Below are positions 5,426-47,224 of a stretch of 64,000 nucleotides of DNA, piece after piece. The notes beneath the pieces were generated by a model. It saw nothing but the letters and a program-made list of their open reading frames with translations, was not told the origin of the DNA and made no database searches. How positions within the stretch are numbered: the stretch's first letter is position 1; each line of letters opens with the position of its first letter. This DNA is from Haliotis rubra (lineage: Eukaryota): the NCBI RefSeq assembly GCF_003918875.1, contig NW_025767002.1:3410001-3474000 (forward strand). Reading direction: 5' to 3'. A program made the position numbers and the translations under genes.

Positions 5426-8078
5426 TCAGACCTTGGCGTCCGATGCCAAGTATTTCTCTAGAGCGTCCAGCAAGTCATTGACTCCCATGTGGTACGGTGG
5501 TTTCCGGAAGCCCGTTGTCACGTGACAAAGGCCTCTGTCCCACCAGTACTGCAAAATGTCCCTGACCTTTCTGGACTTCTCAACCTCTGACTTCAGCTTC
5601 TCGAGTTCTTCCTCTGCTTCAGCATTCTCCTGTTAGTTGGAAAATATGAAAACATTGCTTAGTTTTATCTTGCACTGCTCGAATGATTTTAACATTAAAT
5701 TATGAAATTGCCATGTATTTTAGCGTTAGTGAAGACGCAGGAGGGTCAGTCGTATGATGTGTAACAGTAAGCCATACAGAGTTGCGTTTCTTAGTTATAC
5801 CAGGATCAGACTCAATAATTGACAATTATCGTTAATTTGTCGTCACAACGCCCGTGCCCATGAGTTTCATTAAGTGGTAAACATATGCGAGCTGCATAGA
5901 TTTGGCCGTATTGCTTGAGCTGTGTAGATGAATACTGTTACAATCGGCGAAATCACAATTCATGCACTAAAATACGCCGTTAGTGTCGAATATTGACACA
6001 GTAGCTAGATTTGTGGTAAATCAAAATGTCATGAACACAGAGCCATTCAAAATGTCATGTCCGTGAAACCATTATCAAGGCATGCACATCACTATTTCGA
6101 ACCATCATCGGTACCTGCATCTGTTTCTTCATCTTCATCTGGCGGTTTAATCTGCTCCTGTTGGCCGAATCCTTGTTCCTTTGCTTTCTGCGATCAATCT
6201 TCTGCTTTTCTTCTTCCGTCAACTGAAGGGAAAAATTCAATATTATCAAATGATACAGATATCGATACATTTATCTATCTGAAAATTATTCACTGAATTT
6301 TAATACATAGAATCAGTTTGAATATTTCTCCTACCTCTCCAGACGGTTTGTTGGTGAAATAAACCATGAGTTCCTTTTCCCCTCTCTGGAGTCGCTTGAG
6401 CTGTATCTTCGACTTCAGTCCCTCTTTAACTGAGACAGTTGTAGGAGGGCCATGTGCTGCAACGGATGTGTCGCTCATCACTTCCGGTTCCGGAGGCGGA
6501 ATGTATCTTAGATGGGACGACTGCTCGGTGTGCTGTTGGTAGAGGACATCAACCTCTGCCAGGTCCATACCAGGATCAACCATCGTCTGGGTGGACATGA
6601 GGTCGGTCTCTGCAGAATTGGACGTGGAACCAGAGAGAATGTTCAAAATTTCTGGGAGCTCTGAACTTGAGCTGGAGGTCGGTGTTCCGAACGGTTCGGT
6701 CTTGTGGTTGGTAAATGGATTCGTCGTTGGTCCTAGTTGAGCGTTGATGGATCCAGGCTCCACCACTGAGTCTGTAGTGAAAGGTTCACTCAATTGCGGT
6801 ATGTTTCCATCAGGAATACCAGGAGTACCACAAGCAGTGGCAGCTCCAAAAGTAGGGTTCGGTTGGTACGTCGGCTCAAACCCCTGGATCCATTGCAGTA
6901 GATCGGCCAGGTCGACATGCGACAGGTCAGGCTGCAACGGAACAGCTCCTTGCATGGGGGTGTCAGCAGCAGCTTGGACGTCTTCAGCGTCGTTGGTAAA
7001 TGATGTTGGCAGCCGATCCGGGTTCTGCAGCATGGGGTTTCGAGCCTGTGTTGGGTTTCCGTGAAGCTGCATGGTCAAACTTCCCGGTGTCCCCATCGTG
7101 TCGGAGATCAGAGGGAGGATGTCTTCCACTTCAGGCACATTGGTAGTAGGCACAGGAGGAGTGGTAGTAGGCTGATGAGTAATGGTAGTAGGCAGAGGGA
7201 CAATGTTCGTAGGCAGAGGAGCATTGGTCGTTGGTAGTGGAACAATGGTAGAAGGCGGAAGAGCAATGGTAGCAGCCATTGATTCTTGGGAAGAGTAAAC
7301 ATCCATGGCCTCGAGGTCGTTTGCCCTACTTCTGCAATGTCTCTCAGTTTCACGTTGAGTGACATAGGCTTGGTCCATGGTGCTCGTTCCGCTAGGTTCA
7401 GGGACCTTTGTAGGTGTGAATGTGTACGTCTGGCTCATACTATTATGTATATCTGCATTGCTCCCTGATTGGACAGTGCTAATCATGTGACCTGTCTTTT
7501 CGACTTCTGATTGGTAGTCTACCGTGGAAGCGTACGACACGTCAAGGGGACTTCCTTCAGCCTATGAAGGAGAAAATGCTAATTTACCATTCACATCTAT
7601 TTTTAAATATGAATAATGTACACATAACTAAAGCTATTATCATCTCGATAAATGAACTAACTCCATTTTTTCTAGCTGAAATGTAAATGTATTGATCAAT
7701 GTTGTATTTATGATTCTCTTTCAGAAATGCAAATTGTTAAATAAAAAAAATATATAAGTCTTGATTAATCATAATTGGTAAAAAATGGTAGTCCCTGCCG
7801 TAACGAAATGAATTATCAAAAATGCGGTAACAACGTTTTCATTTTATATACATTTAGAAATTAAACGAATATCCTTTGGTGCATACATTTTCCAGAACAG
7901 TCTAACGGTAAATCAAACGAAAATCACTCACCTCGCAATATTCCTGATCCAAGTCGGGAAAGAGGATTGCCTTGTTCCACGCACTGTTGTTGCCGAAAAG
8001 CGCCTTCAGGTAGCTTGTGGGGTTGTCTGTGTCCACACCGTTCATATCCATTTCTTGCTTCCTTACACTGGGTTCCAT
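5426..8078 (-). CDS. bZIP gene copy 1, ATF3/Fos-like transcription factor, 4 coding exons, about 561 aa
   Basis: Exons 8078-7932 (MEPSVRK...QEYCE|gtgagt), 7561-6335 (long P/T/S-rich exon ending VSVKEGLKSKIQLKRLQRGEKEL...KPSGE|gtagga), 6222-6115 (108 nt, LTEEEKQKIDRRKQRNKDSANRSRLNRQMKMKKQMQ), 5629-5426 (ENAEAEEELEKLKSEVEKSRKVRDIL...DAKV*). All introns GT-AG, phase 0, frame continuous. Confidence 0.9.
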
Positions 8079-8215
8079 TTTAATTCCCCTGTCCGATTTC
8101 TGCTAAACGCCTTTTTATCAGTATTTATCTGCGACCGTCACCAAAGCTTGCTCGCGAGTCAATGGGCTGCTGTGGGCTGCGACCATCGCCAGCAGGCAAA
8201 TTGCTATTCAAACCG

Positions 8216-8264
8216 CCACGTCATTTTCTAGTCAGGGAAAACTTGTACACGAGTGATTGCATCA
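8216..8264 (-). promoter_or_regulatory. Candidate promoter motifs of copy 1: TGACGTGG (UPRE/CREB3/XBP1-type) and TGATGCAAT (C/EBP-ATF, ATF4-type)
   Basis: Plus strand CCACGTCA at 8216-8223 and ATTGCATCA at 8256-8264, about 140-190 bp upstream of the ATG; motif match only. Confidence 0.45.
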
Positions 8265-8486
8265 TCTTGCTTGCACTGTCTCGTGATGAGTTTCAACCAC
8301 GTGCCTGTCCAGGATTAAACACACATAAATATTTTAACTATCTTTATACTTCCTGGATAGATTACATTCAAATACTTTTACTCGCAGTAGTATGCACGCA
8401 TATGGGGCTACTACGTTGTGCACTTGCATCATATGCGTTGTGTTTAGGGGTGGTAATAAAGAGAAATGGTGACGCGTTGATAATGA

Positions 8487-8650
8487 ATGAGTGAGTATGG
8501 TTTTACCCCGCTTTTAGCACTATTCCAGCAATATCAACACGGGGGACACCAGAAATGGGCTTCACACATTGTACCCATGTGGGGAATCGAACGCGGGTGT
8601 TCGGCGTGACGAGCGAACGCTTTAACCACTAGGCTACCCCAACGGCCCCG
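8487..8650 (-). mobile_element. tRNA-derived SINE family A, near full length
   Basis: Reverse complement GGGGTAGCCTAGTGGTTAAAGCGTTCGCTCGTCACGCCG...TTCGATTCCCCACATGGGTACAATGTGTGAAGCCCATTTCTGG...GCTGGAATAGTGCTAAAAGC with (ACTC)n tail. Confidence 0.9.
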
Positions 8651-8759
8651 GTGCGTTGATAAGATGTCTGTCTTTGAAAAGTTTGTTAACGCTTGTACGT
8701 CCTATCCAAATTGAAAGTTTTTTTAAGTATCAATAACCGAACACAATGCCAACATCTGG

Positions 8760-8990
8760 GGTAACTCCTACCAACTGTATACATCCCCGATCCCCCTTCG
8801 CACTGACTGTGTCAGACGTTGACCTTGACCAGGTAGTGCGGTCCATTCTTGATGGAGGTCTTGTTCCAGTACATCTTGTGCTGGAGGATCTCTGCGACAC
8901 CCCATAATGTGAAACACAATCGCAAACATGCTCTATGGGACTGAGATGTGGACACCGATGGGTCACGTTAGCGTTGTTAACGCATCTTCC
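8760..8990 (-). mobile_element. Degenerate Tc1-like transposase C-terminal fragment
   Basis: Translates to CPHLSPIEHVCD, resembling the Tc1 SPDLSPIEHxW motif; no intact ORF. Confidence 0.5.
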
Positions 8991-9046
8991 CGAACGAAAT
9001 CACCAACGGCATGTGCACGAGAGGTCGGCCATCAAATGTACAACAT

Positions 9047-9330
9047 TGACATCTCTTGACCGCCTGCTAGTTCAACTCTCGCTTGCGTTCCTGGGGGCCA
9101 GTCGTTTTGAGGCATTCCTGATTTGTGAAAACAACTGGGTTTGAAGTTTTACATCAAAACCTCGTGAATCCGAACAGAGCCATCTCAGTGAAATTATAAT
9201 ACTCTTGGATTTACAATCATGAATGTGCAGAAATATCCCTCAAATTTGAACGGTAATTGTCCGGATAATGTGGTGTCCGGACTAAACATGTTTTATAGGG
9301 AATATAGGATTCATGAAATCTTGGCCAAGG
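9047..9330 (-). pseudogene. Pseudogenised fragment of bZIP copy 2 (basic-region exon plus upstream intron)
   Basis: After an acceptor AG, 9117 onward reads ECLKTTGPQERKRELN*QAVKRCQ versus copy 2 EYLKTLPPEERKRELNRRAAKRCR, with an in-frame TAG at 9069-9067; 9125-9330 closely matches intron sequence 14325-14540. Confidence 0.85.
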
Positions 9331-9617
9331 ATTGCCATCGATATTTAAAACATTGACAAGGATGTCAGTGATGTATCGTTGTCCATTCAGATTCTATCTG
9401 ACCATGTCAAGGCCCAAAGGGTTGTCCGATGTGTTGCCAATCACACAATTGTATTCATACGTGGTGTCTTATGTTACCTCGCTGGAGGTAATACGGCATG
9501 TACATTTTGAAGAATGACGTTGTATGGCGAAGAATATATAAGGTGTTTCCGTAGATACATATGCTATGTTTGAAATGATAAGCATGCCGCTGTATGGTCT
9601 GTACCATGTGGACACAT

Positions 9618-10665: not shown

Positions 10666-11344
10666 CGTCATGGTCAATAATGTCGCAAGAAATGCTACCA
10701 GGAGACTACATCTTCGCCAGCAACACTTCTTTTACTCAGTGTCTGTGTTTTTTTGTTCTTTTTGTTTTTATTGGTTGGGGGATTTGGTCTGAGTGTCTAA
10801 AGCTTGACTTACTTGCATGCCACACTGTTTACTTTGTACAACTATTGGTTGTCCTGTTGAGGTAGCATCACCCTATAGCCCATCTCACAGACTTCCCCCA
10901 CAATGAAAACACTTCTCCAAACCAGGTGAAGAGGATATGTGTTTAATGTCGCATTGGTGCCTGCGTACGCGCGCGCGTGCGTGTGTGTGCGTGGTGGACA
11001 GTGTGTTGTCACCGATGCAGGGTACCAACAAGTACCATATTTTAAAATCTAACGGTATGACGCTGCTGGGGATCGAACCGCCCACCTACCCTCCCTTCTG
11101 ACATACATGTCATTCCGTTATTTATTACCTACGAGGGCGAAAATATCGGGGTTCATATTTTTCATACGATGTCCTAGGGCAAAATATCACTTTGTCATGG
11201 TGACGTGACGGCATGAAACAATGCTATGACGTCGAGTTTCTTCTGTGACGTTGCATTCTACATGCGGCGACGGCGGGTAGCCAGCCTATGTTTGAAAGTA
11301 GATTTGGCTTTAATTTCCTCAATTTGACGACTTCGGTAATAAAC

Positions 11345-24628: not shown

Positions 24629-27600
24629 TTATACACGGCTGTTTTGGTTCAACCTTGTCCGAACTTGCAGAAGCCGTTGTCTTACTTCTGTTAAGTCGCT
24701 GCGCTGTTGGAGGAGAAGTTTCACCCTCTGAAATATGATCAATAAATTCATGTGTTAATTATATGTCATTTAATTATGATGAAAAACATACCTATATCAC
24801 CTAACACTTTTTAACCCGTCATAGCCTCCAACATAGTATTCGCTTCAGGACCTGTTACATGAAAGTATCCGTCATACTTTCCATCATTGTACCCACATCG
24901 TACCCGCCCAAGTACCCGCTGTGACCGTTACAGTCACGATGCCGGTCATGAACTGACTACAATCATGAATTGGGTTTTATGTTGCTTTTTGCAATATTCC
25001 AGCAATATCATGGCGGGGGACCCCAGAAATGTGCTTCACGCATCGTACCCATGGGGGGATTCGAACCCGGGTTTTCTGCTTTTACCATTAGGCTACCCCA
25101 CCGCTCCATAATATCATGGAAGGAACAGTCGCTTAACACTGCTATGTCATCATCAAATCAAGGTCCAGGACATACTATGGTAACTGCATGAACGCCAAGA
25201 ATAATTTCTTGCTTGTATAATATTCAGCCATCGTCAAACAAGGGTGGATACTTTCTTTTGTTCGTAAGTTTATTTCCCGTCACAGTACCCGCTTTTGATA
25301 GTGATACACCGTTCCTCATACTATGTAGATAATATCCGTTGTCACTTCCGGTTAGGGTCTGTGCCTGCCATAATACCAGTTTAGTACGCGTCAAAGTACA
25401 GGTTGTAGCACTCACATTATAACCCGTTAAAGTAACTATAGTCTGTTTGCAGTGAAGACGTACCGATGAATTTCACTTTAAACAAAAAAGTAAAGCAAAT
25501 AATGTGAAATTAAGATTGCGACACCCTCGTAATTTTACCTTGCCAATTGCACTTTGAATCTCAGAATTTTATTCATCTTAGGAAAAAAGTTGTTTAACAA
25601 ACGATCATAGATTCAAATCGATATTATTGGTTTGTATTACAAGGGGGTACGCGCAGAAGTTGGAACACTGAAACAAATGCACGTGCGGTACGTGATGAGC
25701 GTTAACTTAGACCAGCCCTACTTGTTCTCGGTGTTTCATTTAATGTGCATACACCCTTGTAATACAAACCAAAAATAATGATTTGAAACCACGATCGTTT
25801 GTTAAACAACTTTTATCCTAAGTTTAATAAAATTCTGATATATTTTAAATGTTCAGTTGGCAAGATAAAATTATGAGGATTCGCAATCTTAATTTCACTT
25901 TTTTCGATTTACTTTCTTGTTTAAAGTGAAATTCATCGGTACGTTTTCACTGCAAACAGACTATAGATTTCGCAGACACAGCTTTTTGAGGGGGTGAGGT
26001 GGGGGCTACACAGTACATATGGTCACTTAATAGGGGTGGGTGGGGTGCGCACCCCTGCATCCCCCGTCTGGATCTGTTTATGAGTCCCCACTAAAATATT
26101 TCACTAAAATTTCATACTACCAACCTGTTCCAAGTCCTTCAGGTTCTGTAGTCGCTTGTCTCGGCATTTCTTTGCCGCCTTCCTGTTTTGTACACGTCTC
26201 CGAACCAGTGCGTCGTCACAGTGATCGGCGGCCTGTAGTATATAAAACAAGCATGATTTGAAACAACGGGTTTAACGTCTCGTTCAAGATGTTTCATTCA
26301 GAAAGCGGCGTACATTTGTACTCGTCGGGATTTTATAGTCTGTACTATGCAGGTTTGGTAGTACTAGCCACCATGCCACAACTCAACATTAATACACACT
26401 CATTGAGTGAGTATAGTTTTACGCCTCTTTTAGCAATATTCTAGCAATATCACGGCGGGGGACACCAGAAATGGGCTTCATACATTGTATCCATGTGGGG
26501 AATCGAACCCGGGTCTTCAGCGTAACGAGCAGACGCTTTAGCCATTAGGCAACCCCACCCCGATACCCACCCAGGCATACTATATTGACTCCGAGCCGAC
26601 CAGTAGGCTACTTGATTTATTCTCTCAATGCCGAGCACCAGGCAGGGAAAAAACTGGTACCATCATTTAACGCTTTTAGCGTTCGGCAGGGGCAGCCTGG
26701 TGGTCAAAGCGTTCTCTCGTCACACCGAAGACCTGGGTTCGATTTCCCACATGGTTACACTATGTGGAGCCTATTTCTGGTGTTCCCTGCTTAGATATTA
26801 CTGGAATATTGATAAAAGCTGCGTAAAACCATATTCACTCACTTTTGGCTTTTCGCGTTCAGGGACTCGAACAACCGACTGAGGCTCCACGGACGGACAC
26901 TCTATCTACTCGACAACGGAGGTGGTGGTCTGAGATGAGTTTGTTCCTGAATGTTACATAAAAGTATAATTTTATGCATGTACCTGATGGCTTTTGTCCT
27001 CCGACCTCCCCTCCTCTGTTGCCATGGTTACATGGCTGAGGGTTCCAATTGACTTCTGGAGTAAGGGCGTTTCAGTACCACCACGTATCGAGCTCCTTTG
27101 GATGTCTTTGTTGGTATCTTCGAAATGACCGTCCGTTGAATGACCAGGACCCTTCAGATATGCGATGAGGTCATTGTAGGCCCTTTGTGTGATGTGGTCA
27201 TTGCATGAAGGAGTGCAGTGCCCAGCACTTCCGGTCCCCTCTGCAGAAAATGGACCCGTTTTGGCAAAGTCCAAACTGACCTCGTGACGACCTATCCCGA
27301 TTGCCAAAACATTAATCTCTGCATCCTTAGCAAACGTTTGACTGCTGCAGGAACCGGTGCCTTGTACTTGGTATTGTTCATCTTCTGATGAGGGATACAG
27401 AGCTTCCATTGCTTCAGAACGTTGTTGCAGTGATGGAGATACTCCTTTCTTTACCACCATGGTGTCAGTATTTACCAATTCCTGCAACACTGACCGAGGT
27501 ACCTCATCATAGATCACATTCATAACATCATCAAGCAACCCAGATACATCAGGGCTGACGTCATTGTCCATCAGGATGGTGTGAAGGTTCTGTGACGTCA

Positions 27601-28829: not shown

Positions 28830-30490
28830 CAGAGGTCTAGCAAGCTTGTCACGTACTAGTTTTAATGTATTACTTACAACAGCGTTCGTGAGTGAGTAGA
28901 TCGGTGGTTGAGTGGTTGAGTGAGTAATTGAATATAGTTTTACGGCGCTTTTATCACTATCCCAGCCACCATGTCGTGAGAAACGTCGCAAATGTCTTAG
29001 ACCATAGTACCCAGTTTTAATAATAACAGCTTTTTTAACAAGATTTTCTGGAATCAGAACTGAAATGCGTTGAAAGATTGATACATTGACATCGTCAGTT
29101 TGCACTCTCTTATGTTATGTACGGATAGTAAATAACTATCATAAAAAATATTCAATTCAAGACAGCTTACGTCACCATAGATCATGATGTATCAGTATTT
29201 AGAGTTGGTACAACTGTGTCAATGTGACGTTAAGTGTCCTTGTTATTCATCCATCACGGGATTCACATGCTTAATTATGTAAACGGTGTTTACGTATGAC
29301 CTTTATTAACCAGTAATGTGTGGGTGTGCGGAAATATATGCACCTGACAATGCATGTTATGTTCGTAAACATTGCTAAACAAATCATGACATCATTATGA
29401 GGTCGTTTCGCTGACCATTTTTCTGAATAAAAGTAAATAATTGAAATTGACATAACTCTAGGACAGTATGAAACATTATAAAGAAATTATATGTCAAATA
29501 TAATACAGCTATAGGAGGAGAAATCCGTCTAATCTAAAGATGCCGGAAGTAGAAAACAGTCGAGATTTAGCATGAATATTACTGTAACACAACACTGACT
29601 CACTCACTTAGGATGTATTTTTCGTTATAATAACTTTTTCAGACTCCGTTTCGAAACGCGTTTAATGAAATGAGGAAAACATTTATGCAGAGTATTGGCA
29701 AGCTTGTCACGTACTGGTTTAAGAGTATTCCTTACAACAGTGTTCGTGAGTGAGAAGATAGTTGAAGTGAATACTGCCATAACCGAACAATGATTTACTG
29801 ACTCATTTAGCATCTGTTAAGTTAGTTATCATATTTATTTTAATCAGTCTCCGTTTCGAAATGTGTTTAATGAAATGAGGAAAAATTCTATCCAGAGTAT
29901 TGACAAGCTCGTCACGTACTAGTTTTAATGTGCCACCATATAGCTGGAATATTGCTGAGTGCGGCGTAAAACTAAACTCACTCACTCACTAGAGTAGATG
30001 TGTGAGTGAGTGTTTGAGTGAGTAATTGAATATAGTTTTACGGCGCTTTTTTCAATATTTCAGCCACAATATAGCGAGGAACACCGCAACTTTCTGAGAT
30101 CTCGTTCCACATTTGAGGAGGCGTTTTAATCATAAAACTGGAAATACAATATTCTCTTTAACATGAATTTCTGTAATCTGAAATGAAATGCATTGAAAGA
30201 TTGACACACTGATATAATGATTTATACGTCTCTTACGCTAAAGTACGGATAGTATAGAGCTGTCTTAAAAACTATTTGATTCAAGACAGCTTACGTCACC
30301 TTAGATCGTGATGTAGTGGTATTTAGAGTTGACACTGTACAACTGTGTCAATGTAACGTTTAGTGTCTGTGTCATTCACCCAGAACGGGATTCACGTGTG
30401 CTTATGTAAATGATGTTGACGTGTGTTCCTTTTTCACCAGCAAACTGGGTCGCATGTTGGTGTGTCGAGCGGAAATATGCACCTTAAAAA
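28830..30490. repeat. Diverged non-coding tandem duplication upstream of copy 3 (about 28.9-29.35 kb versus 30.0-30.49 kb)
   Basis: Shared collinear blocks GTACGGATAGTA, TTCAAGACAGCTTACGTCACC, GTACAACTGTGTCAATGT, GGGATTCAC, TTATGTAAA, GCGGAAATAT. Confidence 0.85.
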
Positions 30491-32440: not shown

Positions 32441-32491
32441 TCTTTAAGGCAGACCTGGTCTCGTCGCTGTATGGCTGGAATAATGTCGATG

Positions 32492-32533
<42 letters not shown>

Positions 32534-34953: not shown

Positions 34954-36912
34954 CATGGTCAACACGTACATGTTCAAATACACGAAATGAAATAGGGTGG
35001 ATCCTATTTTCAAATGCAGACGGGGGTAGTTTAAGGTCAAGTTGCCACGGTCATCGTGTGGAAAATTCTTCTTCAGGATACCTTTGTTCCCCGATAAAGT
35101 ATTTTTTTCCTACAAGGAAGTAATTAATATGAAGGCTTCACTTTATTACGATGGATATCTAAAACCAGTGAGTGAGTTTAGTTTTACGCCGCTTATATCA
35201 ATATTCCAGCCATATCACGGCGCGGGATCCCAGGGCTTCACACCTTTACCTGTGAAGGGAATCGTACCTGGATCTTCGGCGTGATGAGCCAACGCTGTAA
35301 CCACTAGACTCCGCCCCTCTCCCTAACACACACACACACACAAAAGAATGGCATAAAATCAGGCCACTTGTTTCGCACGCTTTTGTCTTGTGTTCATGTT
35401 GTTTAACGCCGCACACACGGTGGGGTAGCCTCAGTGGTTAAAGCGTTGGCTCGTCACGCCGAAAATCAGGCCACTTCCCCACATGGGCACAATGTGTTAA
35501 GCCCATTTCTGGTGTCTTGCTTGAATATTGCTAAAAGCTGCGTAAAACTAAACTCAGTCTGTCAGTCAGTTTAACGCCGCACTCAGCAATATACCAGCTA
35601 CCCCAGTGCCCCATCTAACAACAGGAAAGACTATAGAAACTGAAGGACAAGAGTATACATACTGTATATTGTTTAATTCCGTTGATGTATTTTCGGCGTA
35701 TGTTTGTTTGCCAAGTAGAAATATAGTTTTGGGCTGAATTCAATTTAAGCTGTCAATTTAAAATGACAAACCACATATTTTACAGTTGGTGAAATCTGTT
35801 TATTATTTGGGCATAAATGTTAATTCAACAAATTGAGTAATTCTTTTTTATATCATACGTACATGTACTTAAAAAATCACAAATTTTGGTATATATACAA
35901 AGGTTTTCCTATATAAATCATGTATATCTGCCTGGTGATCGATATAGAACAAGATATAAATGGAACACATAAATGAAAAAGATATAAACAGTAACACCCA
36001 CTGTAGTTGCAGCCACGACACCAGGTGTTCGTACAACGTCATGAGTGGACGTGTTCGTTGTTCAACACCACACTCGGCAATATCCAAGTTGCATGACGTC
36101 ATTCTGTAAACAATCGAGTCTGGACCACACAATCAAGTGATTAATATCATGAGCATTGGTCCATTATTGGAATACGTTGCCATATCAACGAGTCTGACAC
36201 TTGTGGTGGACTTAGCAACAAATCTTTAGAGTTTAGACTAAATTGATTGATTTCAATGGATGTTTCCAAGCCTTTTTCTAGTATTTGAACCTGAGCAATT
36301 CTTTGGCCGAAGTGATGTTTTAGATTATGTACGAAAGACTTGTTTAACATTCATTTTAAGGCATGGAAGGAAATTAGATGAATAATTCGATTTTCATTAA
36401 AAGCGTCGGCCTTGTTCACTCATTTAATAAATATGTATCGATTGATCGTGTCAGGTAACAAACTTGCAAGTTAGAGGAAAAAGGAGATTGCAAGATAGAT
36501 TTCCAGCTTCGAATAACTGCCAAAATAGATTTCATTGGGTGTTGAAAGTAAAATAAGGGTAGAAATAATATGAATGGAACACTGAAGATCAGTGATGACA
36601 CCGGGTGTTCAGGAACACGTTAGGTATGTCATGCCCTACCGGTAGCAACTCTTTGACCTTTGTAAACAAAGGATTAACTAGACAAATTCCTAGTTAGGAA
36701 TTCAAATGTCACATAATATTTCCGACAGCGGGGTTTGAGATCAAATGTCTTAACCACCAAATGGCTTTTTCGAAAACTGACCGCAACCGTACCATGTTGA
36801 CGTGATGACGATTCAGTGACGGTGTCTTTCGTGACGACACGTCACTGGTTGTGGCTTTCGTCCCTCGGAGGACCATCAGCCTACTTGAGCTAATTATAAT
36901 TATTATAATTAT

Positions 36913-39424
36913 TCACACTTCACTGATGACATCCGGGCATGAGTGATTCATCAGTACGTCAGTGAATACGTCAACTTCCTCGCTGATACATCGGATGTCC
37001 GCTTCCAGTCGGGAGATGTCTCTCTGCAGCCAGGCAGTTTCCTGGACGAGGAAACCCAATAAGTTGTATTGCATTAAATATTATTAATATATTAAACATT
37101 ACATGATATGCTTACATAAACGAATGCTACCTTGTATACGCAATGATAAACAGATTCATTATCACATGTACATGTAGCTTTAACGCCGCCATGTCCTGCG
37201 CAGAGTTGCGTCCCTTGACCACGCGAGGATTCGGTGATCATGGTTTTGAATCCCAGACTAGGGAGGTTATGCCGTTTTGTTTGTTATAATAGTCACATTG
37301 TTAAACGCATGTCACTATTGTAGCTTTTGTCTGATCATGACACTTCGTAACTACTGTTTGAAGCTCTTAATAATGATAATAAATCATAATAATAATAAGT
37401 AGCCCATTTAGATTGCGCTACATCCACACCGACAGCATGCTCATAGCGCAGGACAGTTAATTATTACCTCGGATAACCCAAGCTGCGCAAGAAGGTTATA
37501 GTCACATGACTTATCCCACCGGGTACCCATTTTCTGCTGGGTCAACAGAGGCAATTTTGAACAAACTCACCTGCCTAAGGTGAAACCACATGTATCACAT
37601 ATGCTTCGTTGTGGGACAGGACTAACGTCCTAGTAACTCTCAGGAGTCAACGTTTCACTCATATAAGATACTCAACGGGCCAAAATGCTCTCAGTAATAC
37701 CGGACCCACCTGTTCCAAGACCGCTTGTCTGAACCTTCTTCTCCTTCTACTCATCTGTGCATGGTGGATGTTCCTTGCTTTGATGCGTTTTTGACTGTCC
37801 TGCTCTTTGCCGATATTCTGAAACACAGGGATAAGGTAGTCTCAGTACCAACATCAACAGGTAGTAGAGGGAGTGAATGAGTTTGCTTTTACGCCGCTTG
37901 TGGCAATACTCTAGCAGTATCACTCCGGGGAACACAAGAAAGGGCTTCACTCACCGTACCCATAAGAGAATCGGACCCAGTCATCGGCAAGACGAGCGAA
38001 CGCTTTAACCACTAGGCTAGCCCAGGTCGTAGATTATTATCAATACAAGAAAGCAGACCCACCTGGCTTACCTGAACGGCCTTCACTGATGTTCTGTTTC
38101 CGGTGCGTGGCCTCTTTCGCTTTGTAGCAGGTTGGGTCGACGTCACTCCGCTCACAGGGCCTTGGCGTCTGTCATGAAGATGCGGATCATCACCATCTTC
38201 GTCAAACATAGATACCCCATCAGCTATACGTTGGACAAACAGAGGAACAGCTAGTGCTCCCGTAGAGGTTGCATTTTCTCCATATACCTGGCCTACATCA
38301 GATATATCTGATACAGGACCTGGGTATGTCTGACAGACACGAGAAGAATCCCCTACGCCAGAAGTTGAAAGGACTTGTCCAGTTCTTCCAAGTCCTCTAT
38401 CAGATGAGCTCCCTGCACCAGGAGCGGAAGTGACATCACCGCCATTTGCCAGATCTTCAGGAACATTCGGTGGTGTCGATAGGGATGCAAAGTGACCTGA
38501 TTGATTTGGGGAAGTTATATTTGGACGTGTATCGCTTCCATTAAATCCCGTATCTGTTCCTTTTTCTCCTAATTTGACCTGGAGATGCTGATGGATGCAC
38601 TGGGTTCCGCCTTCAAGTAGCTGTAGAGCTGTGATGATGGCATCCAGAGCTTGTTGTTCATCGTTCTTGTAGAGCCCTTCCTACAGTGGCGACACAAAAA
38701 ATGTTGAGGACGATATTTAACATGTAAATGTTCCTGCGTCCTGCAAATGTATTCATTGCTAAGGGACTTATAACTGAGGACCTATAGTTACAATTTGATA
38801 TCATACAATTACATTGAGACCATCCAAAGTGTCCAGCGAACAATTATTTTTTAATGGACTCATTGGATCGAACAACCAATGTTCCGCTCTCCCGGAAGAC
38901 GCTCTATCCACTCGACCACGGAGGATTTACCATGATGATAGTGTTACATGCATTAAATGCAGTATGAAAACCTCGTATATCCGGCAACGAGCGACGAGTC
39001 AGTTCTTTAACAGAATTTCACATTCCCCAAACAGCGTATCCTGTTTCAAATCCTTTTCTAAAAAGTGTGACGCAGCGACCTCGATTAAAATAATTGTTCC
39101 ATATACTTTAAACATAGATAATTGTTGTATAATTAATTGAGAAAGTATACACTTGGCGTTTTGAGATTATTTAAATACAAAACCCAAAACAACGTAACTA
39201 TTTTGAAATGTGTTATTATGTACGTAGTCAAAATTAAAACACTTTTCAAAATATTTTCATCGTTTTTCTGGAAAATAATCAGTCTACGCTATCATTGTAT
39301 ACGTCAGTTTACTAATATAATGGTATGAAGCAAAGCGGTATGAAGTATTACGCAATGGAAGGGCTAACGTAATGCGCTGATACGGCATACATTATGAATT
39401 GATAATTATGTTGATACTTACCAT
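36913..39424 (-). CDS. bZIP gene copy 4, divergent Fos/ATF3-like transcription factor, about 282 aa
   Basis: Exons 39424-39422 (ATG|gtaagt; tentative), 38680-38072 (EGLYKNDE...KRKRPRTGNRTSVKAVQ|gtaagc, 203 open codons), 37817-37710 (108 nt, NIGKEQDSQKRIKARNIHHAQMSRRRRRFRQAVLEQ|gtgggt), 37041-36913 (ETAWLQRDISRLEADIRCISEEVDVFTDVLMNHSCPDVISEV*). Confidence 0.87.
37870..38022 (-). mobile_element. SINE family A in intron 2 of copy 4
   Basis: Diverged family consensus on the minus strand. Confidence 0.8.
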
Positions 39425-39550
39425 TGAAATGTGTTTGGTCGACAGTCGAGGTGTAGCAGAGGTAAAATGTGTCGTTGTACCGATCAGCGTATAGGACATA
39501 TGGATAAGTAAACTGTTAAATCTTGAAGCTTTGTAGTGACATCCGTCATG

Positions 39551-39592
39551 CTTATATTTAGAATAACATACGACTTAGTGTCACATGAGTCA
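39551..39592 (-). promoter_or_regulatory. Candidate copy 4 core promoter: TATA-like TAAATATAAG with an AP-1 site just upstream
   Basis: CTTATATTTA at 39551-39560 and TGAGTCA at 39586-39592; GGAAATTTCC (kB-like) at 40133-40142. Confidence 0.4.
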
Positions 39593-40631
39593 GTTGCACA
39601 TGTGTTTAATACAGTTTTGAACATACATTTTATCTTTAAATAATTTTGATATAAGTTTGACATATCCACGCAACCAGCAACGCACGTACGCACGTACGCA
39701 CACACGCACCAGATTCTTTTAAATGATCTGTTCCAACTGAAGCAGCGTTTTATTTCATTCTTGATTTTAATAGCTTTTCAGTGTAAGAAAAGTAGTTCTA
39801 TGGTTGTTAAGGCCTTATTAGGCTGAAAAGTGTGTTCACAAAATATGGCCCCTGTATTGCAGATGATCGTTGACGTTCAACTCCCAAGCCTACGCAGTGA
39901 GTGAGTGAGTTTAGTTTACGCCGCATTCTGCAATATTCCAGCTATATGCGCGCGGGCAATCCTACCCAAATACCAACTGGTTGTAAAAGAATGATCCTAT
40001 GGTATTTCTATTTCTCTTTTTCTGATTAGACGGAAAATATTAATATAACATAGTGTGCAGAATTCAACGACATATGTGTTACAGTGATTAAAATTCCGAT
40101 CATTCTTCCGGGTTCAACTTGACCTCAGTTTAGGAAATTTCCGCCAAGTTTGTTATGCAGAAAATGACCAGTGGGGGTGGTTACCTTAAGCGATGTGGTT
40201 ATTGTGAGATTTCATGGTATTAAGAAGTATAATTCAAGCGTTTTATTAAAAACCACTTGTTCAAATAGAGTTAAATAAAACTCATATGAGATGATTCGAT
40301 CTCTCAGAACAACCGTTGGGGGTACAAGAGGACTGACATAATGTTCTATATACTATTCAAAAACCGAAACGCATAATCCAGAAATCTGTTGCGAAAATGT
40401 TGTATTTTCAAACATGCATAACTCGTCCTCAAATAGACTTTAGTACATGAATTTTTACTTTAGTTTAGCAGAAGGAAATGTCTATACAACCAAATAGATA
40501 ATTTAAGATAACGTAGACGCTGCGCGCACAGTCGAATCTCTCTCAACCTGTTCCGTACAGTTTGACGGGATATCTTCATTATTCCAGGCACTTTTCATTA
40601 TTACTGTTATGAACAACAATGCGCTGAAATG

Positions 40632-40880
40632 AGTGAGTGAATGAGTGTAGTTTTACGCCTCACCCAGTAATATTCCAGCTATATGGCGTCGATCTGTAAA
40701 TAATCGAGTCTGGACCAGACAATCCAAGGATCAACAGCATGAACATCGATCTACGCAATTTGGATACGATGACACGTGTTAACCAAGTCAGCGAGTCTGA
40801 CCAACGTACCGATCCCGTTAGTCGCCTCTTACGACAAACATGAGTTGCTGAAGATCAGTTCTAAACTGGACCTTTACAGG
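40632..40880 (-). mobile_element. SINE family B, near full length
   Basis: Reverse complement of the family B consensus including GTCGCCTCTTACGAC. Confidence 0.85.
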
Positions 40881-42299
40881 TAGCTGATTTGAATGTTTTA
40901 GAAGAGCTCAAGACTGGTTTCAGATTTGGAGAGTAGCGACAGTTGTTTAAATCGGCATTGATTGGTTGTGGCTCCGAAAATACTTCACAAAATATACATG
41001 GATGTTTTCTTCTCTGTTACCTGGCAGGTTTAGTTAGGCGTTGTTATCCAATGGTAAGGAGCATTAACAAGGATATTTGCCTTAAGAGGAGAATGGATTT
41101 AGTTGTGATAAAACTGCATTGAGCGCTCATATACTTGCATGATATTATAGTTGTCAGTCTATTTCTGTTCTGTTGATGTATAGGAAGAAATAAATGAAAA
41201 ATTAAACAAAATATGAATATGACAGAGAATATATACTTCTCTATTATCATCGTGTCGAGAATCCATTGGGCGTGAAAGGCAAACTAGTTTTATGAATGGA
41301 TGACATCGATGGCACTGGGTGTTAGTCATGGGGGTCAGCATGACGTGCTAGAGACCGGAAGCAGTCCGCATTTCTTCATGATAAAAACTGACGTCTGTTG
41401 TTGTACGTGACAAACTCGTTCAAGATAAACGCTGAAATATAACACATCAACGACAGCAAAGAACCTGTGTCATATATCCGAGGAAACGATTCCATTTCGT
41501 TAAAATATTAAAAAACCCGCGGTGACAATCCTATGAAATTTAATACAGAAGGATGACTGCAACTTTCAAACAGCTATCGTTCATATAATGTCCCTAAATA
41601 TACAAGCAATTCCAGCCTATGGTGTCCACGTTGGGTATCTTCCAATTGGCAGACACCCAACTGACAGTCGACTGACAGACACTGATTTAGAAGGTTAATT
41701 AGGGTAACACCTACGGATATAATTGTATCAGATAAATGCTCTGCTTAATGTGCCAAGGATGTCATGATAATGACCAGTAAGCATTACATGTTATGTGCAA
41801 ATTATATGTTATGTACAAATATTATATTTTAGGGAAATGTTTTAGAAATGCAGTGGACGTGATCAACATAGTACCATATTTACTATTTATTTTTTTTATC
41901 TCTGTTGAACTTGTAATAAATATGCTGAATGAACATAACGTCTTTGATTCCATTGGACTGATCCATTATAAGAAATTGGTATCAGCTTGAGGATTAGTTG
42001 TGCACTGAACCAGAAATGTTGTTGTTTTAAGCTGTGTTAGATATGGCTGTCTAAGTTTTGTGAGGGTACCTATGGAACAGTCCCCTGTCTAGTGAGTAGA
42101 TTAGGGTGAGCGTGAATAGGTTCGTTACCGAGAAGTTTGATTGTGTGTTAACAGAACTTTGTTGTGATTAAGTAATTATCTGTCTTCTCAAAATATTTTT
42201 TTACTATCAATTTAAATATTTTATTTTAGTCATTCAAGAAAAGGATTTAGGACAAGTTATCGAACTTAAATTCATGTTATATCAATGTACACAAGTGAC

Positions 42300-43140: not shown

Positions 43141-43932
43141 CAAATATAGCATGTAGGTAGTAGCTAGTCTGTTCACTGAACCGTAAAATGTTGTTGTTGT
43201 CTGTCTGTGTAATGGGAGGATACCTCCATGTTTCATGACTTTAAGATGCAATCAATTATGCTTTTTCTCCAAGAGTTGTTGACTCAAAACTTTTTTGTAT
43301 CAAGGTTACAACCATGACCATATTTGAGTTTTCACACTCTTTTTATTTTAGACATGCGCAGGACGCTCCAAATGTGACTCATAGTCACTCTACCATATAT
43401 TCTCGTATTATTTCAGGTGAACAGTGACATAATCACTATTGTATGATGGACACTTTTAGCGGATATTAGGCCATATGGACGTATTTTCTATTTCTGTATG
43501 AACAGATCATGTCGTGAAGGTTGAACTGATTTACTTGTGACTCATTTAATGATTAACATGGTGTACAACAAGGGTACTAACTTCCACCGACCCTCTTCTC
43601 TATTTATTCAGATGACGTAGTGACTTCGACGATTTATGTATGGTATTACTGAACATTTCTATATGCTATCGTATGTGTTGCTAGTGATATTGCCTTGCTT
43701 GCCTCGGATGAAAATTCACTTCCGTATGTTCTGTAAGTGTCAGGAGTGGCGTCTTGATAAAACACATAAATTAAATGCTTCATTTGTTTGATGTTTCGGT
43801 GCGTCGAGTCTGTTGTCTTCTGATTAGCACTGATTATGAGTCTGTTTCAAATGATACGGCCCTAAAAATAGCCATCCCATGAAAAAACAGAGCAACAGAA
43901 TTTCTGTGCTATATGCTCTTCATATGGATACT

Positions 43933-44097
43933 GTGAGTGAGTGAGTTTAGTTTTACGCCGCTTGTAGCAATATTCCAGCAATATCACGGCGGGGGATACC
44001 GGAAATGGGCTTCACACATTGTACCCATGTGGGGAATCGAACCCGGGTTTCGGCGTGACGAGCCAACGCTTTAACCACTAGGCTACACCACCGCCCC
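43933..44097 (-). mobile_element. SINE family A, full length
   Basis: Near-consensus copy with (GTGA)n tail. Confidence 0.92.
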
Positions 44098-45279
44098 TGA
44101 ATGGCGGAGAACAAGCCTACAAAACATCCGTCGTGGAACTTACATAAGCAGCCCGTGTTTATTACGCGATGCTACCAGCGGGAAACAATGGTAAGGTTCG
44201 CTGACTTACTTCATGCGTGTCATTATATACCACTTGTATTGATCGATGCTCATGATGTCAGTCACTGGATTGCCTGCTGAAGACTCAGTTATGTGTAGAC
44301 CGCCTTTTATTGCTGGAATAGTGTGGTGTTAAACAACAACCACAAACACTCTGTGTTTCTAATCTCATACTCAACTGCAAATAAACCTGCGCACATATCC
44401 GTGTTAAAAAAAATACAATACAGAACTATTTCGAATAGTTTTAGTATTTCCCTTTATTCAGATATTAACTATCCTGCTTTAACTGATACAGAAAATGATT
44501 TCCTACTTAAACTAAATCACATATATCTCTATAATACATTTTATGAACAGCAACTTTCATCCTAATTGCTTATTCAATAACTAGGTCTTGCACAACGGAT
44601 CACATGGTCTGTCCGTCAACACAAAACAATTTCAGTGATATGGCTGTCTTAAAGGGGCTCGCTACCACTGAGTCCCGTGGACAGGGAGTGTTCTGCATGC
44701 CGTGAGAAAGACCGAGCCGTAGCCCGATTTAACTGCCATTTACACAGACATCATGAAGTCTGTGTCGGGAGAGAGGCAAAGGATTTTAAGGACGCATGAT
44801 TTGTTACCCAAGTCTTATCAACCCCCTTACCCCCCACAAGAAAAAAATCAACACCCCACCACCCCTCAAGCCGTCCTTCAAGAGGCACAGAGGCAACATA
44901 TTTTCACTGAACGCGGGACAAAACGCAAGATGGCCGACTTTTCATGACTCATACACTGGGTCACGACAACCTGGCAGCAGCTGAATACGTGAGCATCCAG
45001 ATCTTGGCCCGGTTGCGTTGTCATGGCAATAATGACGTCACGACCCCAGGTCACCCGGCTTGATGTTTCAAATACCAGCAAATATTAGGTAGCGGAAATG
45101 ACCTGACATAACCTAATCACTTGAAATAGAGGTTTTGTTTCAAGGGAATAAAGTAACAGATAGACCATTGTTAAGAGAAATGTTGGGAGAATATGTAAAA
45201 CGGCGCCGCCAGAAGAGCGTATGATCTATGTTTGACAACGGGGCCTGATTCAGAAGGTCGACAGGCGACACAGGTAATT

Positions 45280-47224
45280 TCATGTAGGCGGAGTATCACG
45301 GGGAGGTCGAAGAAGACACTCGTGGCGACGGAGAACGTCCTCCAGGACCTGGATTTGTCCACGGCTGTTGGCGATCTCGTCCTTCAGAAGGGCGTTCTCC
45401 GTCTCATATCCGGCGATCTCCTGGATAAACACAAAACGAAATCATTGGCGAGTTAGTGGTGCTGAACGTTTATTGCTCAACTTGATTTCAGTGTTTTCAA
45501 CTGCAATGGGCTTTATAGTTTGGGTGACTACATTGACTTACTATTCAAGCAGTCATAAGGGCGTATTAAACGAGCAGTGTTATTACCGAGGTTCGGGTTT
45601 CCTGGATGTACTACTATGACGTTCATGTTGGGAGACAATGGTTACTATAGAAACGAGGACCTATCCCTTTTCATATGTCCACTTTGCACAGAAAGACATC
45701 CATGACGTCATGTACATCACTTAATCATCTCTGTTTTGAGGACAATGGAATAGTTTTAAACTATAAGAATTTCTTTACCATGTCAATGTTCTCGATACTA
45801 TTGTATAGATCATCCAGAACATCTCACAAGTACGTAAGCTAATAATTATAGATATATGTTTCCCATTTGAGAACAAATAATGCTCATTGAAGGAGTGTTC
45901 GTTGTGGTATTGCACCACAGTCTATGTTGGCCCTAGACAGTCGATAGACGCATAAATTACGCGGACTACAAAAAAATATTTTAAAATGTTTTGCTAACTT
46001 CAGAAATGACCGATTATTGAATGGTTGCTACTGATATAAAGGCTTGAGATACTGCTTTCCAGTCGTCTTATTCTTTATGTATTCACACCTCCCATAACCT
46101 ATTTACCATACATCCTCACTACCTCATGCATTCCTGCTTCCTCTCGATAGAAGATGTTTATATATAGAATATATACAGCAAACCCTCGTTAACACGAGTT
46201 CTTGTGGAACTGTCCGGGTTACCCAATTCTGGGTTAACAATTGCATATACACGCAGAAGCTTTCGAACTAATTGGTTCTGGAATAATCGGGTTTTACGAT
46301 ATTAAATATGTTTAAATTACCTCTTGCAACAGTTGTTCCCTCTCCTTCTTCCTAATACGACTCATGGTGGCGTGGTGCTTGTTTTTCTTCTTGACTTTTT
46401 CTCGTTTGTCCATTTCCCCTGCTGTCATCTGAAAAACGTACATGAACATTCCGTTTACAATCGAGTCTGAACCAGATAATCCAGTGATTAACATCCTGGG
46501 TGAAATATAAGAAGTTATTCTGGTACGAGCATGTGACAGATTAAAAAAAGTGTCAGTTTTATAAAAGACATTCTTGCCCAATGTTTAGCCCATGAACAAT
46601 GTTCATCAAACTTAAAAAACAAGTCTCCTATTGGGTGGAATATACGAAGTTATTCCTGGTACGAACATGTGACAGATGCAAAAACGTGTCAGTTTTAAAA
46701 CGACAAATGTTTATCCCAAGGACAACGGTCCTCAAATTTGAAAAACAAGTCTACTATTGGATAAAAATATGAGACGTTAATTATTCCTGGCATGAGCATG
46801 TAGCAGATAGTTACCTCAGGTGGTGGTTTCGGCTGACTCGACACAGTAAGGTTGGGTCGCCTCAACTTGATTTTGGTGTTGAGTTCCAGCTTGATTAGGG
46901 GCATAAAGCTGTGACATTCGCTTGTGGCAACCATGGCCTTGGCAACCGCAGGGTCAAGACCATTGTCCAGGGGGTCAACCATATTCAGGTGATCGTCCTG
47001 GGGCATCACCATATATAGGTGATCGCATCACCATTTCAGGTGACTCAGATTCATCATCCATTATATATAGGTGAGGCTCAGACATCATCCTGGGACTCGG
47101 GCAAAACCATGTTTAGGTCATCGTCCTGGGGGTCCGACCTCAACATATCCAGACCCACGTCCTGGGGGCCGGGCACAACCATATTCAGACCAGAAACATC
47201 CAGGGGATTATTTGAATGGTCCAT
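45280..47224 (-). CDS. bZIP gene copy 5, ATF3-like; 5' part disrupted (stop and frameshift at about 47013-47082) or translated from the ATG at 47012
   Basis: Exon 47224 (or 47012) to 46815 (...MPLIKLELNTKIKLRRPNLTVSSQPKPPPE|gtaact), 46428-46321 (108 nt, MTAGEMDKREKVKKKNKHHATMSRIRKKEREQLLQE|gtaatt), 45420-45280 (EIAGYETENALLKDEIANSRGQIQVLEDVLRRHECLLRPPRDTPPT*). Confidence 0.82.

What the first reader, a model, noticed from the sequence alone, without database searches (positions are those of the whole stretch)
6115..46428. DNA-recognition helix has diversified between paralogs, including an unusual NxHHAxMSR signature
Seen: basic-region cores are NKDSANRSR (copy 1), NRRAAKRCR (2), NRKAAKKCR (3), NIHHAQMSR (4) and NKHHATMSR (5). 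Known: in the AP-1/ATF motif NxxAAxxCR the Asn, both Ala, Cys/Ser and Arg contact bases, and replacing the first Ala (Tyr in Maf) accompanies altered specificity. Inference: copies 4 and 5 retain Asn and Arg but share His at the first Ala position plus MSR despite being otherwise very divergent, suggesting a selected non-AP-1 specificity. Copies 1, 4 and 5 also lack the redox-sensitive Cys.
Basis: partly seen in the sequence, partly recalled or inferred. Interest (0 to 1): 0.8.

Follow-up and report, generated by a model that had tools for sequence, protein, structure and literature searches.

The report
Abalone bZIP array with altered DNA-contact motifs
Five neighbouring bZIP transcription-factor genes of the blacklip abalone really do carry different DNA-contact motifs, and two of them keep an unusual histidine-containing motif that selection has preserved across the abalone genus, although the "double histidine" of one copy is only a variant of the reference animal.

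Summary
All five 9-residue cores lie on the minus strand, each in a 108-nt phase-0 exon with good splice sites, followed by a zipper exon. The assembly gaps are intergenic, between copies 2 and 3.

The window is Haliotis rubra. Copy 4 is LOC124284188 and copy 5 is LOC124284189.

**Range.** A profile of the copy 4 and 5 basic exons, searched against 1.84 billion proteins, found only three clusters, all from Haliotis.

**Conservation across four species:**
- Copy 5 keeps NKHHA(T/N)MSR.
- Copy 1 keeps NKDSANRSR.
- Copy 2 keeps the canonical AA..CR positions.
- Copy 4 reads NIYHAQMSR in three congeners.

**Copy 4 variant.** Spliced transcripts from four other samples with the same species label also encode Tyr at the first His codon (site 37766). 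The conserved signature is therefore N-x-(Y/H)-H-A-x-M-S-R, not HH.

**Selection.**
- Copy 4: bZIP dN/dS is 0.08-0.25, against 0.58-0.95 for most N-terminal comparisons.
- Copy 5: bZIP dN/dS is 0.20-0.40.
- The core codons differ synonymously between species.

**Verdict.** These are functional, genus-restricted Fos/ATF3-type bZIPs with a non-canonical basic region. Altered half-site specificity is plausible by analogy with Maf Tyr and Nrf2 A502Y, but it was not tested.

This is a new variant of a known kind, of moderate interest. The scan had already noted this same array on this window (s1-322294, s1-322377), but not on other DNA.

The parts
6115..6222 (-). Copy 1 basic-region exon (108 nt), core NKDSANRSR at 6151-6177. 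Part of P0009, 561 aa, named 'FLO11-like' in RefSeq.
   Evidence: The core is invariant in four Haliotis species.
5426..5629 (-). Copy 1 zipper and C-terminal exon, including the stop. The heptads are weak.
   Evidence: Orthologs are 79-90% identical.
9031..9117 (-). Dead copy of copy 2's basic exon, with a stop codon inside the core.
   Evidence: A counterpart lies in H. asinina at L005:8522-8620.
14213..14320 (-). Copy 2 basic-region exon, canonical core NRRAAKRCR at 14249-14275.
   Evidence: Passes Pfam bZIP_2 on the exon alone. Orthologs read NRRAAKRCR and NRLAAKRCR.
13221..13340 (-). Copy 2 zipper exon with stop. Its 3' end runs into a 98-bp minisatellite (12348-13282).
17739..19326 (.). 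Two assembly gaps (17739-17898 and 18766-19326) around a CTA-type microsatellite. They lie between copies 2 and 3.
26125..26232 (-). Copy 3 basic-region exon, canonical core NRKAAKKCR at 26161-26187.
   Evidence: Passes Pfam bZIP_2 and bZIP_Maf on the exon alone.
24629..24727 (-). Copy 3 zipper exon with stop. All five d positions are Leu.
37710..37817 (-). Copy 4 (LOC124284188) basic-region exon, core NIHHAQMSR at 37746-37772.
   Evidence: Spliced on both sides in RNA contigs.
37766..37766 (-). Variant site: first base of the first His codon of copy 4. The reference has C (His). Four RNA samples have T (Tyr).
   Evidence: table 3 (G>A on the plus strand at full depth in X1-X4). Orthologs carry TAC.
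36913..37041 (-). Copy 4 zipper exon with stop.
   Evidence: The joint 37040|37709 is seen in four runs.
38063..38680 (-). Copy 4 large N-terminal coding exon, with alternative donors at 38063 (isoform X1) and 38072 (isoform X2).
   Evidence: X1-X3 use 38063 and X4 uses 38072.
39422..39499 (-). Copy 4 first coding exon.
   Evidence: A 1454-nt contig of X3 covers 39421-39502.
46321..46428 (-). Copy 5 (LOC124284189) basic-region exon, core NKHHATMSR at 46357-46383.
   Evidence: Orthologs read NKHHANMSR.
45280..45420 (-). Copy 5 zipper exon with stop.
46815..47224 (-). Copy 5 N-terminal coding exons (47084-47224 and 46815-47021).
   Evidence: mapping P0001 onto the window.

Best explanation
The window holds part of a tandem, same-strand array of divergent Fos/ATF3-type bZIP transcription-factor genes of Haliotis rubra. 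The array is older than the split of at least four Haliotis species.

Its members have settled on three kinds of DNA-contact core:
- the canonical x-x-A-A-x-x-C-R in copies 2 and 3;
- x-x-S-A-x-R-S-R in copy 1, and in a further member outside the window;
- x-(Y/H)-H-A-x-M-S-R in copies 4 and 5.

Copies 4 and 5 are intact genes under selection, and copy 4 is transcribed and spliced. Their basic region and zipper are held by purifying selection while their N-terminal halves evolve fast.

Inferred, not shown: both still bind DNA as bZIP dimers. A bulky His replaces the Ala that normally packs against a thymine methyl. A Met replaces the usual Lys/Arg/Gln two residues on. Together these would shift the preferred half-site or its flank away from TGA(C/G)TCA/CRE. 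Ser in place of Cys would remove redox control. The H-H pair of copy 4 in the reference is a derived variant of an ancestral Y-H.
For: **Gene structure.** Motifs and splice sites are as described. The RefSeq proteins map exon for exon.

**Range.** A profile of the two basic exons against 1.84e9 representative proteins gave only three hits at E<1e-3, all from Haliotis.

**Orthologs and order.** The order copy 5 then copy 4 is kept in H. asinina, H. cracherodii and H. rufescens. The order copy 2, relic, copy 1 and a further gene is kept as well.

**Selection.**
- Copy 4 bZIP dN/dS is 0.08-0.25 at dS 0.14-0.77. The N-terminal region is 0.58-0.95 in five of six comparisons.
- Copy 5 bZIP dN/dS is 0.20-0.40 between species.
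- Fisher tests give p from 1e-4 to 3e-7 for copy 4 bZIP.
- The core codons differ synonymously between species.

**Expression.** Spliced contigs of copy 4 occur in four runs, with GT..AG joints and both RefSeq donors.

**Fold.** An AlphaFold2 model of the copy 4 bZIP is one helix over residues 2-73, with pLDDT 96-98 across the basic region and zipper. Copy 5 passes the Pfam bZIP_1 cut-off.

**Precedent.** These residues contact the bases (PMC5737521; PMC3865217). Ala-to-Tyr at the same position changes Nrf2's flank preference (PMC9756947).
Against: - There are no binding data of any kind.
- Copy 4 fails the Pfam bZIP cut-offs (10.5-19 bits against 27.6).
- Expression of copy 5 was not tested. 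Copy 4's exons alone account for about the 0.11-0.12 word share of the RNA runs, so copy 5 may be silent in those samples.
- The tree of 82 columns does not resolve whether copies 4 and 5 are sisters.
- Only four species were compared, using pairwise counts and no site model.
- The runs X1-X4 are recorded only as 'RNA?'. Their spliced contigs show RNA, but whether they come from the same population as the reference is unknown.
Confidence: 0.58

Rival explanations
1. Copies 4 and 5 still bind ordinary AP-1/CRE sites. On this view the His and Met substitutions are tolerated changes that tune affinity but not specificity.
For: Asn, the second Ala, Ser and Arg are retained, which is four of the five base-contacting positions. 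Ser at the Cys position also occurs in ordinary bZIPs (own knowledge). The nearest solved chains are c-Fos for copy 5 and MafA, Jun and Fos for copy 4, though weakly.
Against: A tolerated change would be expected to vary between species. Yet His, Met and Ser are invariant in all orthologs despite near-saturated synonymous change in the core. A bulky residue at this position changed target preference in Nrf2 A502Y and in Maf (PMC9756947).
Confidence: 0.2
2. Copies 4 and 5 do not bind DNA themselves. They act as dominant-negative zipper partners that sequester other bZIPs, in the manner of CHOP.
For: Copy 4's basic exon gets no Pfam bZIP hit, and the whole protein scores below the cut-off. Copy 4's g positions are all acidic, as in Fos, which suggests heterodimers (hand reading of the sequences).
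Against: The strongest constraint falls on the basic region itself. Copy 4's basic exon has dN/dS 0.07-0.26 between the species groups, with 0-1 non-synonymous changes in the 15 core codons. A pure sequestering partner needs only its zipper. No Pro or Gly breaks the basic helix, and the model is one continuous helix.
Confidence: 0.15
3. The shared H-A-x-M-S-R arose independently in copies 4 and 5 by convergent selection.
For: Only 33-36% identity across the bZIP. The tree does not resolve a copy 4 plus copy 5 clade.
Against: - The two genes are adjacent.
- They are the only cross-hit pair besides copies 2 and 3.
- They have the best profile-profile score: 60.9, against 50.7 for copies 5 and 1 and 18.7 for copies 4 and 1.
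- A copy 4 plus copy 5 clade is not rejected (p-AU 0.34).
- A single origin needs fewer changes.
Confidence: 0.12
4. Copies 4 and 5 are decaying duplicates, and their odd cores are neutral drift.
For: They are short proteins with fast-evolving N-termini (N-terminal dN/dS up to 0.95). There is birth and death in the array, with a dead copy at 9031-9117.
Against: The frames and splice sites are intact in four species. The bZIP dN/dS is far below 1. Copy 4 is transcribed and correctly spliced.
Confidence: 0.02

Closest known systems
Fos / ATF3 / JDP2 (and BATF) group of animal bZIP factors
   Same: - The basic region sits in a 108-nt phase-0 exon.
- The intron falls after the first zipper heptad.
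- A His and a nearby Cys follow the zipper at the same distance (+45 and +47 to +48) in copies 2, 4 and 5.
- c-Fos is the best solved match for copy 5.
- Upstream of the basic exon of copies 1 and 5 there is a short K/L-rich motif resembling one in ATF3 and JDP2 (own recollection, not tested).
   Different: - Copies 1, 4 and 5 lack the A-A-x-x-C-R core.
- The N-terminal halves have no detectable similarity to Fos or ATF3.
- The similarities are weak (E 0.017-0.8).
- The family is found only in Haliotis.
- An earlier scan note (s1-320422, unchecked) places a more typical ATF3/JDP2-like gene elsewhere in this genome.
Maf family (core N-x-x-Y-A-x-x-C-R)
   Same: A bulky ring-bearing residue replaces the first Ala of the core. 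MafA is the best solved match for copy 4's bZIP, with NRGYAQSCR aligned to NIHHAQMSR. In Maf, and in Nrf2 A502Y, this residue changes the preferred flank (PMC9756947).
   Different: - The residue is His, not Tyr.
- No Maf extended homology region is matched: Pfam bZIP_Maf alignments begin at profile position 30-33 and fall below the cut-off for copy 4.
- Met-Ser stands in place of Ser-Cys.
Yeast Yap8 and other bZIPs with substituted contact residues
   Same: Substitutions at otherwise conserved basic-region positions go with a narrowed or shifted target site (PMC3865217).
   Different: The positions and residues differ, and there is no relationship beyond the bZIP superfamily.

Membership tests
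bZIP superfamily (Pfam PF00170 / PF07716) | Score at or above the Pfam gathering cut-off | tested here: inconclusive
   Copy 5 passes as a whole protein (bZIP_1 29.9 against 27.6; bZIP_2 22.3 against 22.3). Copies 2 and 3 pass bZIP_2 on the basic exon alone. Copy 4 does not pass (10.5 bits; H. cracherodii ortholog 19.0). Copy 1's basic exon alone scores 18 bits, and its H. cracherodii and H. rufescens orthologs carry a precomputed PF00170 hit.
bZIP superfamily (Pfam PF00170 / PF07716) | Asn and Arg eight residues apart in a basic stretch, followed in register by heptad hydrophobic residues | tested here: met
   All five copies have N-x7-R. The d positions at +10, +17, +24, +31 and +38 read L,L,L,L,I (copy 2), L,L,L,L,L (copy 3), L,L,L,I,F (copy 4), L,Y,L,S,L (copy 5), and a weak Q,A,L,S,L (copy 1). 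This is a hand reading of the sequences.
bZIP superfamily (Pfam PF00170 / PF07716) | One uninterrupted helix through the basic region and zipper | tested here: met
   The AlphaFold2 model of the copy 4 bZIP region has a helix over residues 2-73 of 82, with pLDDT 96-98 over residues 11-60. This is a monomer model only.
Fos/ATF3/JDP2 group | Core N-x-x-A-A-x-x-C-R that reads the AP-1 or CRE half-site | tested here: not met
   Met by copies 2 and 3 only. Copy 1 has S-A..S-R. Copies 4 and 5 have H-A..S-R.
Fos/ATF3/JDP2 group | Shared exon plan: 108-nt basic exon with the intron after the first heptad | tested here: inconclusive
   The plan is present in all five copies. That Fos and ATF3 have the same plan rests on my recollection and was not checked with a tool.
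Fos/ATF3/JDP2 group | Significant sequence similarity to family members | tested here: inconclusive
   The best solved-structure match of copy 5 is c-Fos at E 0.017. For copy 4 it is MafA at E 0.042, then Jun and Fos at E 0.4-0.8.
Maf family | Extended homology region N-terminal to the basic region, and Tyr at the first Ala position | tested here: not met
   Pfam bZIP_Maf alignments start at profile position 30-33, so the extended region is not matched. The residue is His, not Tyr.

The most novel reading that the evidence does not exclude
Copies 4 and 5 define a new bZIP half-site specificity class, born within the abalone lineage. His in place of the thymine-packing Ala, plus Met in place of the usual polar or basic residue, would read a non-TGA half-site or a distinct flank. 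Binding might depend on pH or metal through the His or Tyr-His pair, replacing the lost redox-sensitive Cys.
Probability: 0.25. Interest if true: 0.6.

Novelty: new variant of a known kind. Interest (0 to 1): 0.4.

Why it matters
bZIP specificity is read by five residues that are nearly fixed across eukaryotes. Natural, selection-maintained departures such as Maf, Yap8 and C/EBP have taught most of what is known about how half-sites are read.

Here a young tandem array restricted to one genus holds three core types side by side. Orthologs in several sequenced species are available for comparison, so it offers a compact natural experiment on how new DNA specificities arise after duplication.

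It also carries a practical warning. One striking residue of the reference genome (the first His of copy 4) is not shared by transcripts of other animals.

It does not change any general principle. The genes are already annotated, as uncharacterised proteins.

Tried and rejected
1. An all-against-all blastp of window ORFs to find paralogous exons was swamped by interspersed repeats and was not used.
2. My first guesses at the first coding exons were too short for copies 4 and 5. The RefSeq proteins showed longer N-termini.
3. Pfam scans of the N-terminal and zipper exons alone found nothing.
4. The word-based homolog search with copy 5 found only itself. Its orthologs are hidden in gene models that fall outside the length filter: 396 aa (two copies fused, H. 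asinina), 381 aa (H. rufescens) and 237 aa (cut by the locus end, H. cracherodii). They were recovered by tblastn on fetched loci.
5. A maximum-likelihood tree of the 82-column bZIP alignment resolves only (copies 2, 3) against (copies 1, 4, 5). Long-branch copy 1 lands inside copy 5. AU tests reject none of the three pairings.
6. Copy 3 orthologs were not reached, because they lie in an unfetched 8-kb stretch between loci L002 and L005.
7. Paper searches found nothing on these abalone genes or on a His-containing core.
8. RNA editing as the cause of the 37766 difference was considered and set aside. The same contigs differ from the reference by all kinds of base changes at about 1%, which is what alleles look like.
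9. Pseudogene status of copies 4 and 5 is rejected.

Full report
**1. Observation**

Translating the window in six frames places all five quoted cores on the minus strand, at 6151-6177, 14249-14275, 26161-26187, 37746-37772 and 46357-46383. Each lies in an exon of exactly 108 nt. Each exon is bounded by a pyrimidine-rich CAG acceptor and a GT donor, and is in phase 0 at both ends. The exons are 6115-6222, 14213-14320, 26125-26232, 37710-37817 and 46321-46428, so the finding's coordinates are the outer borders of these exons.

Downstream of each basic exon lies a zipper exon with a good acceptor. Counting from the invariant Arg, the heptad d positions fall at +10, +17, +24, +31 and +38 in all copies. 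The heptads are strong in copies 2, 3 and 4, moderate in copy 5 and weak in copy 1.

Copies 1, 4 and 5 have Ser where copies 2 and 3 have Cys.

The N runs at 17739-17898 and 18766-19326 flank a CTA-type microsatellite. They lie between copy 2's probable first coding exon (16481-16633) and copy 3's stop at 24629. They interrupt no bZIP exon.

**2. Identity**

I built a profile from the basic exons of copies 4 and 5 (A1) and searched it against 1.84 billion representative proteins. It gave only three hits at E<1e-3. Word-based searches and cluster look-ups name them:

- The window is Haliotis rubra.
- Copy 5 is LOC124284189 (P0001, 198 aa).
- Copy 4 is LOC124284188 (P0005 of 307 aa and P0008 of 310 aa).
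- Copy 4 has orthologs in H. cracherodii (P0003), H. rufescens (P0004) and H. asinina (P0006).
- A copy 5-like model in H. asinina (P0002, 396 aa) fuses two tandem copies.
- Copy 1 is P0009 (561 aa). RefSeq names it 'flocculation protein FLO11-like' because of its low-complexity half. It has orthologs in the same three species.

The RefSeq proteins map onto the window exon for exon.

**3. Conservation of the cores**

I fetched the orthologous loci and ran tblastn against them. The cores read as follows.

| Copy | H. rubra | Other species |
|---|---|---|
| 5 | NKHHATMSR | NKHHANMSR in H. cracherodii and in both H. asinina copies |
| 4 | NIHHAQMSR | NIYHAQMSR in H. asinina, H. cracherodii and H. 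rufescens |
| 1 | NKDSANRSR | NKDSANRSR in all three |
| 2 | NRRAAKRCR | NRRAAKRCR in H. asinina, NRLAAKRCR in H. rufescens |

The order copy 5, copy 4 ... copy 2, dead relic, copy 1 is kept on one strand. In H. asinina and H. rufescens a further bZIP gene follows copy 1. Its core was read in H. asinina only, as NRESAVRSR.

The codons of the cores differ synonymously between species while the residues stay the same.

**4. Selection**

Nei-Gojobori counts are as follows.

| Region | dN/dS | Notes |
|---|---|---|
| Copy 4, bZIP (78 codons) | 0.08-0.25 | dS 0.14-0.77 |
| Copy 4, N-terminal region | 0.58-0.95 | five of six pairs; the close H. cracherodii/H. rufescens pair gives 3.6, from 2 synonymous changes |
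| Copy 4, 15 codons around the core | about 0.02 or lower | 5-7 synonymous against 0-1 non-synonymous differences between the species groups |
| Copy 5, bZIP (72 codons) | 0.20-0.40 | between species |

The single non-synonymous difference in copy 4's core is the Tyr/His site. Fisher tests on the counts give p from 1e-4 to 3e-7 for the copy 4 bZIP and 2e-7 for its core. These are pairwise counts on four species, not a site model.

**5. Expression and the Tyr/His site**

Four runs listed as 'RNA?' under the same species label were laid on 36300-42299. All four hold contigs that join 37040 to 37709, and 37817 to 38063 (38072 in X4). The skipped ends read CT..AC, which is GT..AG on the minus strand. 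One 1454-nt contig covers all four coding exons of the RefSeq model. Copy 4 is therefore transcribed and spliced as annotated, and both RefSeq donors are used.

At 37766 every contig of all four runs reads A where the window has G. On the coding strand this turns CAC (His) into TAC (Tyr). The same contigs differ from the window at about 1% of exon positions, by all kinds of changes, and some of these differences vary between runs. That is the pattern of alleles, not of editing.

Together with the three congeners, this shows that Y-H is the ancestral and common state of copy 4. The H-H of the reference is a derived allele or an error. The conserved signature shared by copies 4 and 5 is N-x-(Y/H)-H-A-x-M-S-R.

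Expression of copy 5 could not be tested, because only one read-laying run is allowed. Copy 4's exons alone roughly account for the 0.11-0.12 word share of these runs.

**6. Relationship of the copies**

- Within the window, only copies 2/3 and copies 4/5 cross-hit.
- Profile-profile scores are 60.9 for copies 4-5, 50.7 for copies 5-1 and 18.7 for copies 4-1.
- A maximum-likelihood tree of 82 columns supports only (2,3) against (1,4,5), at 100/99. AU tests reject none of the pairings.

Adjacency and the best score favour a single origin of H-A-x-M-S-R in a common ancestor of copies 4 and 5. This is not proven.

**7. Family**

- Copy 5 passes Pfam bZIP_1 (29.9 against 27.6). Copy 4 does not (10.5 bits, and 19.0 in H. 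cracherodii).
- The copy 4 bZIP region is modelled as one helix over residues 2-73, at pLDDT 96-98.
- Language-model neighbours of both proteins are bZIP clusters. These are leads only.
- The best solved matches are c-Fos for copy 5 (E 0.017), and MafA for copy 4 (E 0.042, with NRGYAQSCR aligned to the core).
- The exon plan and the His/Cys motif after the zipper recall Fos, ATF3 and JDP2. This rests on my recollection.
- FOS and ATF3 are a pair that arose on the bilaterian stem (PMC4736632).
- The Maf extended homology region is not matched.

**8. Mechanism**

Shown:
- The genes are intact, conserved and (for copy 4) expressed.
- Constraint is strongest on the DNA-contact part.

Known from the literature:
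- The NxxAAxxCR residues contact the bases of the AP-1 site (PMC5737521).
- The two Ala residues pack on thymine methyl groups in Gcn4 (PMC3865217).
- Maf has Tyr at the first Ala position, and Nrf2 A502Y takes on a Maf-like flank preference (PMC9756947).

Inferred:
- His at this position, with Met two residues on, shifts the half-site or flank preference of copies 4 and 5.
- Ser removes redox control.

I put about 0.55-0.6 on altered specificity, 0.2 on ordinary AP-1/CRE binding, 0.15 on a non-binding partner role and 0.02 on decay.

**9. Novelty and score**

The genes are annotated but uncharacterised. No paper on them or on such a core turned up.

This is a new variant of a known kind: a genus-restricted bZIP pair with a selection-maintained non-canonical core. 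The H-H pair is partly a feature of the reference animal, divergent bZIP cores are not rare in invertebrate expansions, and no function is shown. I score interest at 0.4.

The scan had already noted the same array on this window (s1-322294, s1-322377), but not on other DNA.

Noticed in passing
L005:18290-18382 (H. asinina); L006:15473-19875 (H. rufescens): A further bZIP gene (595 and 638 aa, Pfam bZIP_1) lies just downstream of the copy 1 ortholog. In H. asinina its core reads NRESAVRSR. In H. rubra it would lie beyond the window's left end, so the array has at least one more member, whose core resembles copy 1's S-A type.
   Followed up: partly
window 9031-9117 (-); L005:8522-8620: A dead copy of copy 2's basic exon, with a stop inside the core, has a counterpart at the same relative place in H. 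asinina. The relic is therefore older than the split of the two species.
   Followed up: partly
window 12348-13282: A 98-bp minisatellite (9.5 copies, 97% matches) repeats the 3' end of copy 2's zipper exon, including a stop codon in frame. H. asinina also has extra partial copies at L005:5557-5723.
   Followed up: partly
window 5426-8078 (-), protein P0009: Copy 1 is named 'flocculation protein FLO11-like' in RefSeq because of a Thr/Pro-rich half. It is a 561-aa bZIP protein with a conserved Trp-rich tail after a weak zipper.
   Followed up: partly
L004:10742-11956 and 28978-29996 (H. asinina): Copy 5 is duplicated in H. asinina. The two copies lie 18 kb apart and are nearly identical (dS 0.02). 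One gene model (P0002, 396 aa) merges them.
   Followed up: partly
L003:11587-11712 and 14978-15103 (H. cracherodii): An identical second copy of copy 4's zipper exon lies 3.4 kb downstream of the first. This is either a local duplication or an assembly artefact.
   Followed up: no
window 37900-38100, 39900-40100, 40500-40900: Interspersed repeats with a tRNA-like end (loose ends reading ...GGGGAATCGAACCCGGG...) draw contig depths of thousands in the RNA runs. One of them sits in copy 4's intron. They look like an abundant, transcribed SINE-like family.
   Followed up: no
window 1-3400: A 61-bp satellite of 55 copies (84% matches) with strong GC and AT skew lies at the left end of the window.
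   Followed up: no
window 38063 / 38072 (-): Copy 4 has two alternative donors 9 nt apart, giving the 310-aa and 307-aa isoforms. Both are seen in RNA contigs: X1-X3 use 38063 and X4 uses 38072.
   Followed up: yes
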